This document shows positions 22,942 through 43,414 of a DNA stretch of 64,000 nt, one piece after another. The stretch is taken from IMG/VR virus record IMGVR_UViG_3300045125_000071, positions 1-64,000 of that record. The stretch is one strand, 5' to 3'. The notes under the pieces are model-generated. The model saw nothing but the letters and a program-made list of their open reading frames with translations, had not been told where the DNA came from and searched no databases. Made by a program: the position numbers and the translations under genes. The first letter of the stretch is position 1. Every line of letters starts with the position of its first letter.

Positions 22942-23546
22942 CTTGATATGTTTCTGGGTTAAAGGTATCTCTTATGGTATCTTTTGAATAATTTTCAACA
23001 TCATTTTTGTTAAAACGTATTCATTTTTACCTGTTTGTCTCATTTCGTCATGTTTATTAGCAAAAATTGTTGTGGATTTTGATTAAAAGGATATGAATCC
23101 AAAGACCTCATTTCTAATTTTTCCTCAGGTGTTTTTGGTCTGACATTATCGATTTTTGTGCTTAACATATCAATTTTTGCCATAACATTATCCATAGCTG
23201 CGAGTTTTTGTTCCAAATCATTTAATTTGGTAAAAACATCATCCATTTTGGTTATTACACCTGAATTATCCCCCTTACTCGCATCCAATTCTTTTTTTAT
23301 ACTTTTAGTCATATTAACTAAATCTGTAATATCAACCTCCTCAACTTCATTTTCTGGCATTGCTGGTACATCACCACCAGGAGCTGGTACATCACCTTCT
23401 GTGGGTGGTGGAACATCTCCACCAGGTAATGGGGGTACATCACCTTCAGCAGGTGGTGGGGGTATTTCTTGCTCTGATATAATATATTTGTACTTATAAA
23501 TTTGATTAAACCTATTTAATTCTTCCTGTAATTTTTTCTTATTCAT
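22925..23546 (-). CDS. putative head-associated/scaffold-like protein with Pro-rich GDVP repeats and coiled coil
   Basis: Starts MNKKKLQEELNRF; four GDVP repeats; coiled coil LNDLEQKLAAMD; one indel near the C-terminus. Confidence 0.55.
23358..23462 (-). repeat. four tandem (E/G)GDVP Pro-rich coding repeats
   Basis: AEGDVPPLPGGDVPPPTEGDVPAPGGDVPAMP. Confidence 0.8.
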
Positions 23547-34675: not shown

Positions 34676-37169
34676 TTAAACATATGAATTAGATAAATAA
34701 GACAACCTATCAACTAATTTACCACCCAATTCGGATGACGATAATAACATTTCATTTACTGCCCTACCAACTTTATCTACCGAACCATCATTTGCAGCTA
34801 ATAAAATTTTAACCGTGTGAGTTGTTTCAGTTTTATTTTTTTCCATTGTATTTTCTGGTGTTGGTTTTTCAATTATTTTTTCGCGTAATTCCAATGGTTT
34901 TATGGTTGATGCGAAACTAACTAAATTATCTTTTGTAACTAAATTTTTATTTGGTTCTTCTGGTTCTACATTTGGTTTTGTTTGGTTAAACTTAGCAAAT
35001 ATTCCAAATTGATTATTTATTAAGTCTAATGTTTTTGTTGTATTTGATGTATTCATCATAATACCATCATTTTGCTTGATTAATATGTCTTGACCATTAT
35101 TAATTTAGAATATGCATCAATTAAAATTACTTACTAAGGTGTTTGATGTTGAATCAGTAAACCATTTGTTGATTTAGTTTGTGAAGCAAACGTATTCAAA
35201 TAATTTAATAATTGGTTATTTAAACTAAGAATATTATTAGAAGTATTTTGTGTGTTTTGTGCTATATTCAACGTATTTGTAACTAAACCATCTTGTTTTG
35301 TATTTAAACTTGTTAAGTTAGTAATAGCATCATTGTTAAATGAAAAATTTATACTACTTAAATCAACACCAGTTAGTGTGCTAGTAGTTTCTGATTTTTT
35401 TGTTGTTTTAGTTGGTTTTTCACCAGTTTCTGGTGATTCGGGAGTAGTTAACTAGATGTTTTTTCGGGTTTTTTTCCTCTATTCATAATATCAGACATAG
35501 CTCTTTTCATTTCATCAGCGAGTTCTTTACCTTTACCTGTCATATTGGCAATATACTCTTTAAGCCATAGGTCCAGTCATATCTGAAAACCTTTCATATT
35601 TACCGCCTGTTGTTGCTTGAACAATTGATTTACCTTGTTCTCTTATAAAAACACCAACCTTGTTTAGCTGCAATTGATAAAATTGCTGATACATCTCTTT
35701 AAGATTTTCAACATCTGAAGCTTGTTTTCTGACAATTTCTTCGGATGACATTTTTACAAATTCATCTTGAAATTCAGTTAATCTTACCAATTGTTTTTGA
35801 TGTCAAATCTTCTAATGCAACTTCTTTTGCACCAAATTCTTTTTGTAATTGTTCGCTGTTTAATTCAATTGTCATTTTACCACCTTTCATTTGAGAGATG
35901 TTGGTGATAAACTCTCTTTGACTATCTGTTAACGTTAATCCACGAGCTGCTAAATCAGAAGCTGCTTTGCTTCTTTCTGCGGCTGCAATTGCTACCTTTG
36001 AGAACTCTTGATAACTAACACCTAAAGCATCTGCCATTGCTTTAGCTTTTCTTAAATTAATTCCAGTTATTTCAAATCTACCCTGTTCTTCATTATATAA
36101 TGCTAAACCACCTGTTGCACCTATCAACGCATCTTGCAAACCCTCAACATTGTTTGTTGCCATATACATTAATTCTGGGGGTCATTAAAATCACCAATTG
36201 CACCACCAAGAACTTGTAAGTTAGCTGACAAATCTAAAGCACCTTCTGGATTGATTACTTTATCAGCAATTTTAAAACATCATCCATGCTCATTCTAAAT
36301 TCAGTGGCTTTTCTTGTCATAGCCGCTAAACCATCAATACCATTTTTAAAACCATATTCATTTAACTTACTAATATTTGTCGATAAATCCTTTGTCGCTT
36401 TTTGTGCTTGTAAACCAAGACCTAAAGCCGCTTTACCAGCTGCTCCTATCCTTTCTTGTGCATCTGCGGCCCCTAAACCAACTTTTTCAAATTCAGGGTA
36501 CATTGCAACTAAATTTTCTAAAGAACCAACATACGCTTTAGCTAATGCGCCAGCTCTTGTCCAAGTATCAGCGTTAATTGTTGCGAATCTACCTGATTGT
36601 GTTACTAAATTTTGTGCAGATTGTGCTAATTCATCGAACCCGATACCTAATTGTAATAATCTTGGATTTGCTGTTGTTAATTCTTCTCTAAATCTTTCAG
36701 CATAATCTCCAGTCATTCCAGCCTTTTCATTAATCATTGTTAATAAAGCAGACTGTTGTTGAAAATATGTCTCAAGAGATTCTATTGCGGTTTTAATGAG
36801 TTTACCCATTATTTCTCTTGGACTCATTAACTTATCTTGCTCATTGAATATTAAACTATACGCTTCCTTAATAGATAATAATTCATCATTACAGGCCTGG
36901 CATATATTCCCTTTTTTCTTGAGCAAGAAATCATGGTTTGGAATAATTCTGGAACACTTAATTTTGATACTTCAGATTTTATTGGTTTTACTCCAGAAGG
37001 AGTATACGTTCTTGATGATAATTTAGCACTCTTTATATTACTAATATCGTCATTTAATTCTCTCGATGTTTTGTTTGGATTCGAAGATTTCCACAAATTT
37101 ATTGCAGCTTCCTCTGATACACCACTATCTAAACATGCTTGAATAAAATTTCTTTAATTCGTTATTCAT
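34676..37169 (-). CDS. tape measure protein (~830 aa, frameshifted)
   Basis: Ala/Leu-rich helical fragments 36255-36926, 35774-36169, 35560-35790 and 34676-35059; directly after the tail chaperone. Confidence 0.75.
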
Positions 37170-37173
37170 AATA

Positions 37174-37180
37174 ATAAATA
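37174..37180 (-). promoter_or_regulatory. TATTTAT late-promoter candidate
   Basis: 4 nt upstream of tape-measure ATG at 37169. Confidence 0.6.
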
Positions 37181-37185
37181 CATAA

Positions 37186-37344
37186 TTACTGTTTTTCCAA
37201 CTCCATTATGTATTCTTATGTAATATCGCCTAATGAAGACTGGCATACTGATTACATCGCTGTAACTAAAATTTCTGTTGACTAAGATACAGATATTTCA
37301 GATAATTGGTTCTTCTTATACTCCGAAGAAAGGGCGAAAAATTC
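37186..37344 (-). CDS. tail-assembly chaperone extension ('T' part), no obvious upstream start
   Basis: FALSSEYKKNQLSEI..LVNRNFSYSDVISMPVFIRRYYI; overlaps the chaperone end at a T-run. Confidence 0.55.
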
Positions 37345-38062
37345 AACCCCAAAGCCGATATAATATTCGACCTTTTCTCCTGATGGGGCTGTTGCTGTTT
37401 GCTTTTAATTCTATACCTGGTTTATGTTTGTTAACATACTTTCTAAATTCTTGTAGAATCTTTGATTGGTAATGTATCGATGAAATTTTTAATATTCATC
37501 ATATCCCTATTACCCTTAACTGATTTAATCATAAACTCAAGTTCTTTTGTTTTGACTGGCGGAACACCTAAACCATTCCAACTTTTTTAATTTCTTCCAA
37601 CTCTTTTTCTTGTTTTTGATTCAAAACTTGAATGTGATATCAATACCAGTTTTAACCATTGTATATGAATATTCACCCATAGCATCTGCAACCAATTCAA
37701 ATGGTTTGAAGTCAAGAGAACCTAAATCACACTTTGCAGTAAATGTTTCATCTGTTTTTGGGTCGGTTAACGTTAATTCGTATTCTGAACCAAATGCGGT
37801 GTTTCTTAAAAATATCAAAATTGCTCGAACATCCTCATCAACCAATTCTTCAGTATTGATATCTCTATCAATTACTTTTCTTTTATAATTTCTGTAATGA
37901 GATTATTGGATTGTATTAAATTGGGTGCCGATAATATGTTTCATCTGCTGCTGTCAAATATGCAACACGAACAGATTTTTTATTATTAGCATAATAAATT
38001 CCTCTACTTAGTAATTCAACTACATCATATGCGATGTTTGGGTCAATTCTATATTCTTCCAT
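37316..38062 (-). CDS. tail-assembly chaperone / T4 gp26-like protein (frameshifted)
   Basis: YDVVELLSRG..Y, YLTAADEN, DVRAILIFLRNTAFGSEY, C-terminal GFGVEFF(RPFFGV*); between tube and tape measure. Confidence 0.75.
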
Positions 38063-38102
38063 ATCTATAATTTAAAACAATAATTATCAGAAAATCAAGT
38101 TT

Positions 38103-38134
38103 AAAAAAAGAACCCACCAAAATTGGTAGGTTCC
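38103..38134 (-). terminator. intrinsic terminator after tail tube
   Basis: GAACCUACCA-AUUU-UGGUGGGUUC followed by U7. Confidence 0.85.
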
Positions 38135-38158
38135 AATAAACAAATGCAACAAATATAA

Positions 38159-38646
38159 TTAGTATACCTGTATACAACGGTCCATGCGTAATGTGCAGTC
38201 GATACTTGCCAAATCATCCCTGGAATAATCCAAATCACCGAAGTTCAAATCTGTGATAAAGCAACCAACAAGAATCCATTTTTCCACAACAACACCAGTT
38301 GGGTCGAGCATTTCAAGCTCCACATCCTTCTTATAGCCCGCTGCATAGCCCATTCTGCCCGTTACAGACTCAGCATGGAGTCTGAACCACTCCATCAATG
38401 CCTGAGATGCTGAAGGGCCTATTGGGTCTTTAAACTGTACTTTAATGGACTCCCAGTTAAATCTACCAGCTACGTATGTTGAAGTATTTAAAAGGGAATT
38501 TCTACATCCTTAATCTTTGCACTTGGTCTTGATGCCGATGTAACATACCATTCATTGATACCTAAACTTGATGGAAATCTTACAATAAGCCTATTTTTCC
38601 TCTTAGGTTCAAATGGTATTGGCATTTTCATTAGTAAATCCGCCAT
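38159..38646 (-). CDS. tail tube protein (T4 gp19-like; indels in the 5' half)
   Basis: MADLLMKMPIPFEPKRKNR, TYVAGRFNWESI, EKWILVGCFITDLNFGDLDYS, LRMDRC. Confidence 0.9.
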
Positions 38647-38686
38647 AATGTATTTTTTTAAAAATTTATTAGTTTATTATTTTATT

Positions 38687-38693
38687 ATAAATA
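38687..38693 (-). promoter_or_regulatory. TATTTAT late-promoter candidate
   Basis: 40 nt upstream of tube ATG at 38646. Confidence 0.6.
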
Positions 38694-38764
38694 TGTGGTT
38701 AAAAAAATAATTTTTGAGCACCTCTTGATTTTTTGATTTTTTTTTTAGTATTTTTTCCGAACAC

Positions 38765-38950
38765 CAATATACTAGTTACTAATACTACTAATACTAAATT
38801 AATATTATATAAGTAATAAAATATATACTAGTACTAATACTACTAGTACTACTAATATTAAATTAATATTACTATATAGTAATAACAATACATAGAATTA
38901 TATACATAGTAATAAAATATTAGTATAGTACTAGTATTATAATACTAAAA
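38765..38950. repeat. non-coding TACTA/TAGTA palindromic low-complexity island
   Basis: About 14 TACTA copies; TACTAGTA at 38826, 38841 and 38929; perfect 18-bp palindrome TATTACTATATAGTAATA at 38867-38884. Confidence 0.9.
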
Positions 38951-38952
38951 CT

Positions 38953-38983
38953 AAAAACCCCGAAAGAAATTTAGGGTTTTTTT
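38953..38983. terminator. probably bidirectional terminator after tail sheath
   Basis: AAAAACCC...GGGTTTTTTT inverted repeat with A/T runs on both sides. Confidence 0.7.
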
Positions 38984-38988
38984 ATTTG

Positions 38989-41877
38989 CTATACCGTTAT
39001 ATTATATATTTTCAAAACGATGCTCCAGTTGGATGTGATAATGAATTCAACATCTATGAATTCTAGCGCACGAGTGGGTTTAATATAAATCTTACCCCTC
39101 AATGTGTTAGCATCAATATCCTCTGGGTCATTTGATACTGTTACTCTGAAATCTGTTAAACCTCTTTCCTTTTTAATTGATTCAAGAATTGGGTTAACTA
39201 ATCTCAAGAATTCATTTCTAACTTGTTCATCATTTTGTTCGAACAACAATCTAACCGCAACTGCTGAAATGAGTTTTCTTGCTCTAAGTAACAATCTTCT
39301 AACATTCATTCTATCCAATGCTGATTCTTTAACTTGAAGTGTTTTATTACCCCAAATAATCGTACCAGTATCAGAGAATGTTGCAATTGGGTTAATTCTT
39401 GCTTGATAAAGGTCATCTCTTTCGTCAAGTGTAAGTTTCTTGTACGCTTTAACAGAATTAACAAGACCTCTTGAATAACCAGCAACAGAGAACCAAGGAT
39501 ATGCAACATTATCAGTCAATGCTATGTTTCTAACAACTTCACAAGTAGGTGGAACATATAAATTAGTACCACTATCAGCATCTTTTACTTGTATCCATGG
39601 CCAATATGTTGCAGAATAGTTTGAATCCAAATCAGCAGCTTCTAATTCAGCAATTACAACATCAGCTGATTCTGAATTTCTAGTGTTGATTATGTATAAA
39701 GAATCCGCTCTATCTGTTTCAACCATATCGATAGCTTGTTGTGTTAAAGATGTATGGTCATAAAAGTTAATACCTGGTGTTGCGAAAACATTGATATCAA
39801 CCGCTTCTGGGTTTGCAAATGTTTGAATACCAGTTAAATAAGCGTAGTAATCGGAATTACCAACTGTTGAACTGAATACACCACTTGTTGCAACGGCAGT
39901 TGATTGGTTTGCAGTATATGTGTTTTTACCAAAAATGTATGCATCATCGTATGTTCTAACATTTCTATAGATATCCCAACCATCAAAACCACCAGAACAA
40001 GCAAATGTGAATTTTCTATTTCCAATCGGTGCTAAAAGACCTTTTGATGTACCTTCCAAATCATAAGGTGTTGTTTCGAATTCATAACCTGTTGGGGTAT
40101 TTCCAGTAAATCCAGATGCGTTTACTGACAAATGGAAACCAGGAGTTACACCTGTTACTGACGCAGAACCTTTATAAGTAAATAAGTCATTATCAAATGA
40201 AAAACCAGCTTGAGTGGATAAACCAAGAGAAACTTTCTTAATTTTATCACCATTTGAAATAACTGCTGTACCGTCTGATTCATATCTAACAACGTCACCA
40301 GCACTTAAATAACTTTTCTTATATACAACTCCACCGAGTGTTTTAGCACCAAATGTATCATTAACACTAAATCCTCTGAAACCACTAGGTACAGCATCCG
40401 TTGGGTGATTATCGGCATAGACTAATCATGATATATTTAGAAACCAATGGATAATCACCATTTGATGTACCGATTTTTTTGCGATAAATCCTGGAACATC
40501 TGGATTCATAGAACATCTAGCATATCTTTCTATTACAACCATGTTATCGTCTGTATCATTAAAATCACGAACAATTACATCGAATTCCATTTTTCTAAAT
40601 CGATATTTTGAATCATGACCTTAACTTCAGTGTTTGAAGAATTACCATCTGATACAGTAACAACACGGAATAAATCAACCACTTTATTACCTCTAACTTC
40701 TGATACAACATATGGTGATTGTGCTGTTCTCCATTCTGAGACAAATTCACTTGCATCAAGATTTGTTGTTACAGTGGTACTTAAACCTCTTATATGACCT
40801 TGGTCATATAAATTTTTAACCAAATTGCTATAATTTTTCATGTACGTAAAGTGGAAAATCAGAATAATCTCTATCATAAACGTCACTACCTAAAACTTTA
40901 GAAATGAATTTGGTAGATGATGAATCTAATGAACAATTAAATGTTTTTTCACCACCAGTATATCCAGTAACATTTATAACAAACTCACCAAGAGCATTAG
41001 AATCTAAATTATCAACTTCTGATATTGTAACACTAGTTGCACCAGTAACTTCTCTAATCAAGGTTTGTCCATCATAATGTCCTCTTGACCTTAAAGCCAT
41101 AACAATTAAATCTTCATAATTTTCATTAACATATGCACCATATGAGTATCTTGTTACGTTAAAAGTCGAACCCGTTGTATACACAAATAAGTAAGCATAT
41201 ACACTTGTTAAACCTGATGAATATAATTTGTTATACCATTCTTTTCCATTAGTATTTTCATCATTATATAATCCAGTTAATGGTGAAACTAATTCAGTAC
41301 CAGTTAAGCTAGTTGTTCCTGATGATGGTACTTTTCCTAATACAAACCATTTATCAGCATCTGTTGTACCAGTAAAACCTGAAAAATTTGCAACTAAATA
41401 ATCAGTGATTGTTTCACCATCTATTGCAAGTTTATCAGATAATTCAGTATAAAATGTACTACCTGTTATAGATGATTCTGATGTCGCATCTAATGTTCCA
41501 GATGTTGTTGTTGGTGTTGTACCAGTAACAACTAAACCACCTAAAGTTGATAAACCATAAGTTCTATATGGTTTATAACCAGTTAATCCTAATACTCTTG
41601 TTATAAACAATTGATTAGATTCTTGCAAATATGATTTTGCAACATATGGTAATTCATATTTTGGATTACCATTACCATCTTTTAAAACGGAAGTGCCTCC
41701 GAAATAAGTCCTAAAGTCATCATAATTTGTTACTAAAACTGGTTCAAATGCTGGTCCTTTTAAGGTTTCACCAACAAGACCCAATGTTGTAACACCCACA
41801 CTCTGAGCTACAAACGTCAAATCTTTTTCCGATGTGTACACACCAGGTGATACAAATACTCTGTTAGAAGTTGCCAT
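38989..41877 (-). CDS. contractile tail sheath protein (T4 gp18-like; frameshifted)
   Basis: MATSNRVFVSPGVYTSEKDL, GLVGETLKGPAFEP, FATPG, YWPW, PWFSVAG..RG, WGNKTLQ, NVRRLL, IYIKPTRALEFI. Confidence 0.95.
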
Positions 41878-41914
41878 TGATTTTAATTATTTTAAAAAAT
41901 TTATTATCTACCTT

Positions 41915-41921
41915 ATAAATA
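41915..41921 (-). promoter_or_regulatory. TATTTAT late-promoter candidate
   Basis: 37 nt upstream of sheath ATG at 41877. Confidence 0.6.
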
Positions 41922-41997
41922 TCTTTATTTTGTTCAAAGATTTTTATATTATTATATTTGAAGATAGTTTTAGATAATTAATTATCTTTTTGTATTT

Positions 41998-42163
41998 ATG
42001 ATTCAAAAAATCTCATATAAGAATATAAAAATCAGTGAAAAACATCATAAAATGTTGAAAGACCACTGTGACAAGAACGGTTTAAAAATTCATAAAATTT
42101 TGGAAAAATGGATTGAAGAAAATTTAAAACCAAAGAAAAAAAGACATATATGGGGAAGATTAA
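41998..42163 (+). CDS. small ribbon-helix-helix-like DNA-binding protein
   Basis: KNIKISEKHHKMLKDHCDKNGLKIHKILEKWIEE (beta-strand plus two helices); divergent from sheath. Confidence 0.65.
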
Positions 42164-43414
42164 TGCAAATATGTGATTCCAATTTTAGAACCAACCATTG
42201 GTGTATAATTTAATTTTAAAACATAATCGCTCGTTATTTCATATCCGATATTTTCTTCTTCAACAAGACCATTAATATCCAATGATATAATATCTTTTAT
42301 AGCATTAATAACAGTAAATTCTAAACTTGTACCATCATAAGTGTAATATTCGGTAGCCACAAATAACGGTTTTCCGTAATTATCAATAAAATTTGTTGTT
42401 TTGTTTTTATAGTATGTTATTGTTATTACTACTACCCTCAAGTGGCGCTTCCTCAAATGTAATCTTTGAAGTACCAGCTATATGGTAATAATCATCATTC
42501 ATTTGTTGCAACAACCCGTTAACAGCAACACTAAATAATACAGATATTGTTTCACCAACACTAAATTGTGTTTGCATACCATCTGCTGTAAAGTTTGATA
42601 CTTTTATATCTATTGATTTATTTATAACTTTGGTTTCAATTGCTCTCCTATCAATAAATTCATTCATTAAGAAAAATCTACTTATTGCTGGTTTAACTTC
42701 AAACTCTTCTCTATCAATTAAAAAACCTAACATGATAAGTTTATAATTTTGAATATAAAATCTTCTACCATCAATAGTATCCATTGGTGTACTATCATCT
42801 ATTGTATCTAAAATAATTGGTATATAATGTCCCTTTACTGTTGTATATGCCTGTCTAGATGAAAATTTTTGTAAAACAATTTTATTGAATCTGTTTAAAT
42901 CCCTGAATTTATTACAAACTATTGTAATTTCATATGTTATGTCAACCGCAACAGGCTGTGGTATTTTATATATATCGGCACCCATTTGTGAACCATTCCA
43001 TGTTGGAACAGAAGCATAATAAAAGGTTTTTCTATCTGGTATTGTTCTTTGTGTTACTGGATTTGTTCCTGGCTGAACATCTGGTTTTCTAATTACAGCA
43101 ATAAATGGTAATTGCATATTACCATCATCATCAGCAAATTCCCAATTATTAGAAAATTCTGCCCATCTTTGTATTGTCAATATTTTATTTATGACTGGTA
43201 TTTTTTGACCATCTGATATTACAACAAATGATGTTTTAATAAAATCTAGCATACCCAAATCTAAATCGTCATGTAAAATAGAATCTGGTAAATAGGTATC
43301 TGATTTGGTAATTCTGTCAAGTAATTCTTGCCTCCTATTTTGTATATCCTTACCTAAAAAGTATGGTTTATTTCCATAAACCTCAATATTGTTTTTTCTT
43401 TTTGGATATGCCAT
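42160..43414 (-). CDS. tail terminator / sheath stabiliser (T4 gp15-like) with C-terminal extension
   Basis: ILHDDLD, LPFIAVIR, PQPVAVDITYEITI; frameshift into 42160-42456. Confidence 0.65.

What the first reader, a model, noticed from the sequence alone, without database searches (positions are those of the whole stretch)
38765..38950. 190-bp TACTA/TAGTA palindromic island between sheath and tube genes
Seen: non-coding, and nearly all of its few G/C bases lie in ACT/AGT contexts. About 14 TACTA copies, three TACTAGTA palindromes, a perfect 18-bp palindrome, a near-identical 22-23 bp direct repeat (near 38768 and 38824), and a right half that loosely mirrors the left. It sits between the sheath terminator and the tube promoter, so it is probably weakly transcribed, and nothing like it occurs elsewhere in the window. 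Inference: a replication origin/DNA-unwinding element with iterons, a packaging or nucleoid-anchoring site, a cruciform, or a decoy array that titrates a host restriction or DNA-binding protein recognising CTAG/ACTAGT.
Basis: partly seen in the sequence, partly recalled or inferred. Interest (0 to 1): 0.62.

Follow-up and report, generated by a model that had tools for sequence, protein, structure and literature searches.

The report
Conserved repeat island between tail genes
A unique, extremely AT-rich array of short TACTA/CTAG repeats lies between the tail-sheath and tail-tube genes of this uncultured T4-like phage and of most of its relatives; it is probably a protein-bound control site on the DNA, most likely a replication origin, but its function is untested.

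Summary
Window 38765-38950 holds 14 TACTA and 7 TAGTA. No other 186-nt stretch of the 251-kb virus record has more than 4. It is also the least stable duplex of the record and the richest in TpA steps. It is not a base-calling artefact: 43 of 59 distinct relatives (sheath 72-79% identical) carry five or more copies of the same motif family (CTAG, CCAGT/ACTGG, TTAGWA) at the same place.

The array is one part of a conserved module. A two-way terminator sits beside the sheath stop. Then comes the variable array, then a conserved box, then the tube gene's own promoter-like motif. Read on the strand opposite the genes, the box resembles a Bacteroidota-type promoter (TTG-N19-20-TAnnTTTT) that points into the array. 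It is present in 56 of 59 relatives.

The module occurs once per genome in all three genomes scanned. Cultured distant kin lack it. No conserved RNA fold, cruciform signal, Rfam family, GC-skew shift or excess of contig ends was found.

My best reading (about 0.3) is a transcription-activated origin: micro-iterons plus an unwinding element, comparable to T4 oriE/oriF. The rivals are a motif-rich non-coding RNA, an operator array, a pac site, and a neutral spacer. Function is unproven.

The parts
38989..41877 (-). Tail sheath gene (gp18-like). In this assembly it is split into several frames by indels.
   Evidence: PHROG 23 tail sheath, 4.9e-51 for 38989-40131 and 1.3e-08 for 40828-41877. Frame changes are seen. 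An RNA-run contig lacks 1 base at 40834.
38951..38985 (.). Two-way intrinsic terminator hairpin (AAAAACCC...GGGTTTTT), with a T-run after it on both strands.
   Evidence: Read directly and folded. In relatives a GC-rich hairpin at the same place has an A-run before it in 45 of 53 cases and a T-run after it in 29 of 53.
38765..38950 (.). The repeat island: 14 TACTA, 7 TAGTA and 4 ACTAGT in 85% A+T sequence.
38766..38886 (.). Two tandem units of about 56 and 65 nt (38766-38821 and 38822-38886), a sign of recent duplication within the island.
   Evidence: Pairwise alignment; repeat families D2-D4 and D6.
38867..38884 (.). Perfect 18-bp palindrome.
   Evidence: Only 9 perfect 18-bp palindromes exist in the 251 kb.
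38932..38947 (.). Perfect 16-bp palindrome next to the terminator. It lies where relatives carry a TATAA-type element.
38725..38756 (+). Conserved box. On the + strand, antisense to the genes, it reads as a Bacteroidota-type promoter-like pattern (TTG, 21 nt, TATTTTTT) that points into the island. The predicted start is near 38761.
   Evidence: the homologous TTG-N19-20-TA[GT][TC]TTTT is on the antisense strand in 56 of 59 relatives, with no homologous match on the sense strand. The box is the most conserved block of the spacer apart from the tube promoter. Caveat: its last base is T, whereas this phage's own ORF-linked promoters prefer G.
38685..38694 (-). Promoter-like motif ATATTTATAA, 40 nt upstream of the tube ATG. 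It is probably this clade's late promoter.
   Evidence: Invariant in the 59-sequence alignment. The same motif lies 10-40 nt before many start codons across the record.
38159..38646 (-). Tail tube gene (gp19-like), with one frameshift near 38480-38490.
   Evidence: PHROG 4542 and PHROG 45. The two pieces are contiguous in about 70 relatives.

Best explanation
The island is the variable core of a single-copy, clade-specific, cis-acting DNA module. It most likely serves as a replication origin of the 'promoter plus unwinding element' kind, decorated with very short iteron-like repeats.

Shown:
1. The array is unique in each of the three genomes scanned. It is the least stable 150 bp in two of them and fifth least stable in the third.
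2. A motif family with a palindromic core is kept at this site across relatives: CTAG, or CCAGTA/TACTGG, with TTAGWA in one clade and TACTA here. Copy number, spacing and order change freely, and tandem duplication is visible.
3. The array is always framed by a two-way terminator on the sheath side. On the tube side it is framed by a conserved box that, read antisense, looks like a host-type (Bacteroidota sigma-A) promoter aimed into the array.
4. The frame stays with the array when foreign genes are inserted next to it.

Inferred:
1. Early in infection the host RNA polymerase starts at the box and transcribes about 220 nt through the easily melted array as far as the terminator.
2. The transcript, or the opening it causes, lets replication start, as at T4 oriF/oriG (R-loop) and oriE (early promoter plus iterons) and at the lactococcal phage c2 origin.
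3. The repeats bind a phage or host protein that marks or bends the site.
For: Uniqueness and instability.

Positional conservation and motif enrichment: CTAG- and CCAGT-centred hexamers are 30-86 times enriched over the flanks, and 43 of 59 relatives have 5 or more copies.

The module is missing from cultured distant kin, whose sheath-tube spacers are only 17-94 nt.

Conserved antisense promoter-like box in 56 of 59 relatives. That a Bacteroidota-type promoter is relevant follows from about 20 canonical TTG-N19-TAnnTTTG sites 20-35 nt before start codons at 156-181 kb of the same record, 82 hits against 32 in shuffles, together with the published -7 box (PMC9723704).

Terminator with a U-tract in the antisense direction in 45 of 53 relatives.

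Six relatives have no motif but keep an AT-rich spacer of the same length and the same frame. This fits a requirement for unwinding rather than for a specific sequence.

Gene insertions occur next to the module but leave it intact.

Precedent: T4 oriE has evenly spaced direct repeats and depends on an early promoter inside a late-gene region; oriF and oriG are a promoter plus a downstream unwinding element (PMC3016281).
Against: There is no functional data of any kind.

There is no GC-skew inflection at the site, and it lies inside a long run of co-oriented late genes.

The repeats are 5-9 nt long with spacings of 6, 8-9 and 14-16 nt. Classical iterons are 17-22 bp and regularly spaced.

No initiator gene lies beside the module.

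The promoter-like box always ends in T, whereas the phage's own ORF-linked promoters prefer G, so it may not be a promoter at all.

The same anatomy fits a small RNA gene or an operator array equally well.
Confidence: 0.3

Rival explanations
1. A small non-coding RNA gene on the strand opposite the tail genes, about 38761-38985 on the + strand. The host-type promoter would give a transcript of about 220 nt that ends at the terminator. It would be largely unstructured and carry many UWCUAR motifs. It would act through those motifs, for example by soaking up an RNA-binding protein or nuclease, as CsrB and CrcZ do.
For: The promoter-like box, body and terminator form a complete unit. Where motif direction can be read, the copies face the same way as this transcript: 14 TACTA against 7 TAGTA in the window, and 8-11 against 0 in the TTAG-type arrays. 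Keeping the motif while its arrangement changes is how sponge RNAs evolve. The module stays intact next to inserted genes.
Against: No conserved fold was found: RNAalifold gives -5.2 kcal/mol antisense and -0.75 sense, with a single compensatory pair. Single-sequence folds favour the sense strand in 45 of 59 cases. Palindromic motif cores point to double-stranded DNA recognition. Six relatives have no motif at all. There is no Rfam match. No expression data exist: the one RNA run found does not cover the island.
Confidence: 0.22
2. An operator array. The repeats would be binding sites for a dimeric phage or host DNA-binding protein of the ribbon-helix-helix or TrpR/MetJ style. This protein would control the tube gene's promoter, or the divergent box, from upstream.
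For: The motif cores are palindromic: TACTAGTA, and CCAGTA joined to TACTGG. Spacings of 6-9 nt match contiguous tandem boxes of the MetJ (8 bp) or omega (7 bp) type. The array sits directly upstream of conserved promoter elements. Many relatives also carry a 16-bp operator-like palindrome, TGTTCCACGTGGAACA.
Against: The array occurs once per genome and at no other late gene, and no regulator gene lies beside it. The distance to the tube promoter varies by tens of nt. The TTAG-type arrays are pure direct repeats with no symmetry. Six relatives lack the motif yet keep the promoter.
Confidence: 0.2
3. A packaging-initiation (pac) site of the P1 kind. Two clusters of short motifs with a palindromic core would flank an AT-rich centre and be recognised by the small terminase subunit.
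For: The site is single-copy. In a 23-sequence subfamily, left and right motif clusters flank a variable AT-rich middle. From my own knowledge, T4 has a gp16-binding sequence with a homologue in gene 19.
Against: T4-like phages package by headful without a strict pac site. Contig ends are not enriched at the array (5 observed against 2.4 expected). Many arrays are not built from two clusters.
Confidence: 0.07
4. A spacer with no function. The AT-rich DNA between two transcription units would be prone to slippage, and short repeats would expand and decay in it neutrally.
For: Tandem duplications and unit expansions are visible. Sequence turnover is extreme. Six relatives lack the motif.
Against: The same rare motif family is kept at this one site across relatives whose sheath proteins differ by 21-28%. 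Enrichment is 30-86-fold, even though CTAG is depleted to 0.16-0.29 of expectation elsewhere in two of the three genomes scanned. The length of the spacer and its frame are conserved.
Confidence: 0.08
5. A decoy or designated target for a protein that recognises CTAG, either a host restriction enzyme or a phage nuclease. Cruciform extrusion is a sub-variant of this idea.
For: Lineages with CTAG arrays deplete CTAG in flanking DNA (pooled observed/expected 0.26 against 0.58). In G002, 9 of the 117 CTAG sites in the genome lie in the array's spacer.
Against: The association rests on a single clade-level transition. A cluster of cleavable sites would normally be lethal to the phage. The window's own array is mostly TACTA, with only 4 CTAG. 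The DNA fold does not stand out (z = -1.07).
Confidence: 0.05

Closest known systems
Phage T4 origins: oriE (early promoter plus a cluster of 12-nt direct repeats) and oriF/oriG (promoter plus downstream DNA-unwinding element, R-loop priming)
   Same: A promoter of the early, host-polymerase type sits inside a block of late structural genes. It reads into easily unwound DNA that carries short direct repeats, and the repeats are kept at the syntenic place in relatives (PMC3016281).
   Different: The repeat units are 5-9 nt long with irregular spacing, not evenly spaced 12-mers. There is no sequence similarity. The site lies between genes 18 and 19. Origin activity is untested here. Even in T4 the role of the oriE repeats is undefined.
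Lambda ori and iteron plasmid origins
   Same: Repeated sites with internal dyad symmetry lie beside an AT-rich region, once per replicon.
   Different: No initiator gene surrounds or adjoins the site. The units are much shorter than 17-22 bp. Their number and spacing are not conserved.
P1 pac site and E. coli oriC GATC clusters (from my own knowledge)
   Same: Both show a local pile-up of a short palindromic tetranucleotide or hexanucleotide. In a subfamily here, two clusters flank an AT-rich centre.
   Different: The core is CTAG or CCAG, not GATC. No link to methylation has been shown. Methyltransferase genes were found in G001 and G002, but not in the held parts of G000 and G004.
MetJ, TrpR and omega-repressor operator arrays (from my own knowledge)
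   Same: Tandem 7-8-bp boxes with CTAG at or between the boxes, in contiguous arrays upstream of promoters.
   Different: No such repressor was identified. The array is 100-190 bp long and occurs once per genome.
CsrB, RsmZ and CrcZ protein-sponge RNAs
   Same: Each has its own promoter and terminator. The motif is kept while the arrangement and copy number drift.
   Different: The motif is different and is not held in conserved hairpin loops. Expression has not been shown. The likely host phylum (Bacteroidota) lacks CsrA and Hfq (from my own knowledge).

Membership tests
T4-type R-loop origin (oriF/oriG) | An early or middle promoter that reads into the element | tested here: inconclusive
   TTG-N19-20-TAnnTTTT is on the antisense strand in 56 of 59 relatives. 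Its last base is always T, while ORF-linked promoters of this phage prefer G.
T4-type R-loop origin (oriF/oriG) | A DNA-unwinding element just downstream of that promoter | tested here: met
   The array is the least stable 150-186 bp of G000 and G004 and the fifth least stable of G002.
T4-type R-loop origin (oriF/oriG) | A persistent RNA-DNA hybrid and measurable origin firing | not testable with these tools
   This needs infected cells. The only sequencing run found does not cover the island.
Iteron origin (lambda, RK2/R6K, T4 oriE-like) | Three or more direct repeats of about 12-22 bp at regular spacing | tested here: not met
   Units are 5-9 nt long. Spacing peaks at 6, 8-9 and 14-16 nt with no helical phasing. 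Arrangement is not conserved.
Iteron origin (lambda, RK2/R6K, T4 oriE-like) | A cognate initiator gene that overlaps or adjoins the repeats | tested here: not met
   The neighbours are the sheath and tube genes. Inserted ORFs in four relatives carry DUF7487 or OmpA-like domains.
Any Rfam RNA family | A score at or above the family's gathering threshold | tested here: not met
   The best hits were 24-28 bits, against thresholds of 65-114 for those hits, and lie on or beside the terminator.
Structured non-coding RNA | A conserved secondary structure with compensatory changes | tested here: not met
   RNAalifold on 23 sequences gives -0.75 kcal/mol sense and -5.17 antisense, with one compensatory pair that lies outside the array.
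Sponge RNA (CsrB/CrcZ-like) | Own promoter and terminator, plus many copies of a short motif | tested here: inconclusive
   The anatomy fits. Transcription is not shown and the binding partner is unknown.
Cruciform-forming palindrome | A long, near-perfect inverted repeat with folding energy well beyond shuffled sequence | tested here: not met
   DNA fold is -18.5 kcal/mol, z = -1.07, and 34 of 200 shuffles fold as well. The self-complement is only 73%.
pac site (P1-type) | Terminase cleavage, or a pile-up of read ends, at the site | not testable with these tools
   No raw reads were available. Contig ends are not enriched (5 against 2.4 expected).

The most novel reading that the evidence does not exclude
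The array is a designated self-break site. In lineages that purge CTAG from the rest of the genome, the one cluster that is kept would be cut or nicked by a CTAG-specific nuclease, either the host's restriction enzyme or one made by the phage. This would create a defined DNA end. A T4-like recombination machinery could turn that end into the start of recombination-dependent replication or packaging. It would also explain why foreign genes land next to the array.
Probability: 0.05. Interest if true: 0.85.

Novelty: new variant of a known kind. Interest (0 to 1): 0.5.

Why it matters
Cis-acting sites such as origins, packaging signals and regulatory RNAs are almost unknown for uncultured T4-like phages of Bacteroidota, although this clade is abundant: more than 598 related stretches turned up in IMG/VR. 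This module is a sharply defined, single-copy element that is easy to recognise and can be cloned and tested. If it proves to be an origin, it would be a sequence-recognisable origin shared across a whole T4-like clade. It would also bear on the long-open question of what the T4 oriE repeats do. If it proves to be an RNA, it would be a new repeat-motif RNA in a phylum that lacks Hfq and CsrA.

Tried and rejected
- Alternative genetic code. The ORFs look broken, but the stop codons are of mixed type. Relatives read straight through the tube break, and a short-read-derived contig lacks one base at a break. I kept table 11.
- Megablast against named phages found no match. By protein, the closest cultured phages are only 35-40% identical.
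- Rfam gave nothing at threshold.
- The E. coli-type sigma-70 scan found fewer sites than shuffles do. Sense-strand sigma-70 readings (TTGACA-N17-ATAAT, and palindrome plus TATAAT) look plausible by eye. I set them aside because the phage's own promoters are of the Bacteroidota type.
- The TTGAC-N3-GTCAA hairpin idea fails: many relatives carry a C..A mismatch there.
- A helix between CCCAGTAT and ATACTGGG that would bracket the array: six sequences break the pair, so I read the two ends as motif copies, not as a stem.
- The box and the 16-bp palindrome are not repeated regulatory elements. They are not found elsewhere in G000, G002 or G004, apart from one perfect copy of the palindrome at G000:184040.
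- Contig ends at the array show no significant excess.
- Sequencing runs: one metatranscriptome holds a relative's sheath fragments only. A 35-nt hit inside the island is an unrelated low-complexity contig.
- The link between CTAG depletion and array type was downgraded, because the tree shows a single transition.
- The methyltransferase search is uninformative because the records are incomplete.

Full report
What the window is. The window is the first 64 kb of a 251,358-bp IMG/VR virus record, 31% G+C, rated 75% complete by CheckV. Genes from 1 to about 44.5 kb run on the minus strand. The ORF at 38989-40131 and its upstream piece at 40828-41877 match tail-sheath families. The ORFs at 38159-38398 and 38488-38646 are two halves of a tail-tube protein.

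The reading frames are broken by frameshifts, not by one kind of stop codon. In about 70 relatives the two tube halves are contiguous. A contig from an Illumina RNA run lacks one base at 40834, where the sheath frame breaks. I therefore treat the breaks as assembly indels and kept table 11.

No named phage is close. Megablast finds nothing. By protein, the best matches are Microcystis phage Mel-JY01 (40%), Flavobacterium phage immuto (38%) and Pelagibacter phage HTVC008M (35%).

Positions 38765-38950 contain 14 TACTA, 7 TAGTA, 4 ACTAGT and 3 of the record's 7 TACTAGTA. Of the 28 G/C bases, 22 lie in TACTA or TAGTA. The 18-bp perfect palindrome (38867-38884), a 16-bp one (38932-38947) and two tandem units of about 60 nt are all present.

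No other 186-nt window of the 251 kb has more than 4 such pentamers; the mean is 0.33. The only comparable repeat clusters in the record look like coding repeats. The island is also the least stable 186 bp of the record (3.2 sd from the mean) and has 58 TpA steps against a next-best of 37.

It is one part of a conserved module. A search with the sheath C-terminal region found more than 598 related stretches in IMG/VR, and I kept the best 80 (72-79% identity). Seventy of them include the start of the tube gene.

Apart from four with inserted genes, their sheath-tube spacers are 226-354 nt; the window's is 342 nt. Cultured distant kin have spacers of only 17-94 nt and no array. Read in the direction of the genes, the 59 distinct spacers (58 relatives plus the window) share one plan:
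- a GC-rich hairpin flanked by an A-run and a T-run;
- in many, a 16-bp palindrome TGTTCCACGTGGAACA followed by a TATAA-type element;
- an AT-rich array of 100-190 nt;
- a strongly conserved box of the form GTAAAAAACTACGAAAAA...TTGAC-N3-(G/A)TCAAG;
- 30-50 variable A-rich bases;
- an invariant ATATTTATAA;
- an A-rich leader of about 35-40 nt with no Shine-Dalgarno sequence, then the tube ATG.

The ATATTTATAA motif lies 10-40 nt before many start codons across the record, including the sheath gene. It is probably this clade's late promoter.

The array itself. Hexamers centred on CTAG or CCAGT are 30-86 times more frequent in the array segments than in about 395 kb of flanking DNA from the same loci. 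Forty-three of 59 arrays have five or more copies.

The shared motif is roughly W-C-T-R-G-W-A, with a palindromic core. The variants are:
- CTAGTA/CTAGAA and CCAGTA/TACTGG in most relatives;
- TTAGTA/TTAGAA, all in one orientation, in seven relatives;
- TACTA(G/A/C)TA in the window;
- no recognisable motif in six relatives.

Copy number, order and spacing are not conserved. Units expand by tandem duplication: 6 nt x 8 in L081, 16 nt x about 12 in L061, and about 60 nt x 2 in the window. Spacing peaks at 6, 8-9 and 14-16 nt, with no 10.5-nt phasing.

I scanned three large records (G000, G002, G004). In each, the sheath-tube array is by far the strongest cluster of its motif: 18 against 4, 11 against 3, and 9 against 4. 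It is the least stable 150 bp in two of them and the fifth least stable in the third. Neither the box nor the 16-bp palindrome is repeated elsewhere, apart from one perfect copy of the palindrome at G000:184040. The module is therefore a single-copy cis element.

Which strand matters. The record carries about 20 textbook Bacteroidota sigma-A promoters (TTG-N19-TAnnTTTG) that lie 20-35 nt before start codons at 156-181 kb. In total there are 82 hits against 32 in shuffles. This matches the published -7 box and the lack of Shine-Dalgarno sequences in flavobacteria (PMC9723704). The host is therefore probably a member of Bacteroidota; this is an inference.

Read on the strand opposite the tail genes, the conserved box is TTG-N19-20-TA[GT][TC]TTTT in 56 of 59 spacers, including the window at 38725-38756. 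The sense strand has no match at the homologous place. Transcription from the box would start at the edge of the array and run towards the hairpin beside the sheath stop. That hairpin has an A-run on its sheath side, which is a U-tract for the antisense direction, in 45 of 53 cases. Only 29 of 53 have a T-run on the other side. When foreign ORFs are inserted (L019, L061, L065, L069), the array keeps a terminator beside it.

Two caveats apply:
- The box always ends in T. In this phage the G-ending form is the one enriched before ORFs: 24 of 55 G-ending sites precede an ORF, against 16 of 112 T-ending sites.
- The upstream TATAA-type element resembles a degenerate late promoter in the sense direction. 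Sense transcription of the array therefore cannot be excluded.

RNA structure. Single-sequence folds are more stable than shuffles on both strands, and more so on the sense strand (mean z of -4.9 against -3.7). The folded stretches include the terminator. On a 23-sequence alignment, RNAalifold finds essentially nothing in the array: -0.75 kcal/mol sense and -5.2 antisense. The only compensatory pair lies in the TGTTCC/GGAACA hairpin.

The apparent stem between CCCAGTAT and ATACTGGG is broken in six sequences, so I read those ends as motif copies. As single-stranded DNA the island folds no better than shuffles. There is no Rfam match.

CTAG usage. CTAG is depleted genome-wide in G000 (observed/expected 0.29) and G002 (0.16), but much less so in G004 (0.78). 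Across loci, those with CTAG arrays have flank values of 0.26, against 0.58 for those without. On a sheath-plus-tube tree, all TTAG-type and motif-less arrays fall in one supported clade of 13 rows. This is one transition, not a replicated correlation. Methyltransferase genes were found in G001 and G002 only, but all the records are incomplete.

Interpretation. The firm result is a single-copy, clade-specific, positionally conserved module with four parts: a two-way terminator, a motif array in the most meltable DNA of the genome, a conserved promoter-like box aimed into the array, and the tube gene's own promoter.

Three features favour action at the DNA level: the palindromic motif cores, the extreme instability of the duplex, and the survival of the frame without the motif in six relatives. 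The closest described precedents are the T4 origins. T4 oriE combines an early promoter with a cluster of direct repeats inside late genes, and the role of those repeats is still undefined. T4 oriF and oriG combine a promoter with a downstream unwinding element (PMC3016281).

I therefore rank a transcription-activated origin first (0.3). A motif-rich antisense RNA (0.22) and an operator array (0.2) follow. A pac site, a CTAG-directed decoy or break site, and a neutral spacer are less likely. None of these can be separated without reads or experiments.

Negative evidence. There is no skew inflection at 38.8 kb, no excess of contig ends at the array, and no informative sequencing run.

Noticed in passing
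window 38480-38490, 40131-40830 and other places (for example 36926-38150): Many genes are split by frameshifts. Relatives read straight through the break in the tube gene, and an Illumina-derived contig lacks 1 base at 40834. The record looks like an indel-prone (long-read) assembly, so homopolymer lengths, including the T10 run at 38737-38746 inside the promoter-like box, are unreliable.
   Followed up: partly
window 41914, 38686, 34633 and 10492 (minus-strand genes), and about 40 more sites across G000: The motif (A)TATTTATA lies 10-40 nt before many start codons. It is the reverse of the T4 late-promoter word TATAAATA, read on the coding strand. It is probably this clade's late promoter.
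   Followed up: partly
G000:156000-181000, + strand (outside the window): A dense run of canonical Bacteroidota-type promoters (TTG-N19-TAnnTTTG), each 20-35 nt before an ATG, with no Shine-Dalgarno sequences. This looks like an early-gene block and points to a Bacteroidota host.
   Followed up: partly
L019:5264-6781, L069:3229-4749, L061:5523-7133 (minus strand), L065:5162-5839: Four relatives have genes inserted between sheath and tube, next to the array. Two (L061, L069) were scanned and are cysteine-rich ORFs of about 500 aa with DUF7487 (one also has a weak Mom-like hit). L019 carries a similar ORF with the same N-terminal sequence as L069, not scanned. L065 carries an OmpA-like ORF of 226 aa. 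L061 also has a 16-nt unit repeated about 12 times, and L065 has a 380-nt array of TACTGG-N-CCAGTA palindromes.
   Followed up: partly
G000:184040-184057 (outside the window); relatives' spacers, for example L037 and L025: The palindrome ATGTTCCACGTGGAACAT is part of the sheath-tube module in many relatives. In this genome it is absent from the module but occurs once elsewhere, in a different context.
   Followed up: no
whole records G000, G002 and G004: CTAG is at 0.29, 0.16 and 0.78 of expectation respectively. The clade whose arrays lack CTAG is the one that shows little or no CTAG depletion.
   Followed up: partly
window 41878-42406: A spacer of about 530 nt lies upstream of the sheath gene, with a possible 71-aa ORF on the opposite strand (41998-42213). 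Position 41880 is among the least stable stretches of the record.
   Followed up: no
G000:145283-145414 (outside the window): This is the second least stable stretch of the record, with weak similarity (78% over 50 nt) to part of the island's surroundings. It lies between two promoter-like motifs that face opposite ways.
   Followed up: no
window 23364-23459; G000:191841 (outside the window): Tandem repeats that look coding: a 48-nt unit x 2.1 in the window, and a long CAGCA-rich run at 191.8 kb.
   Followed up: no
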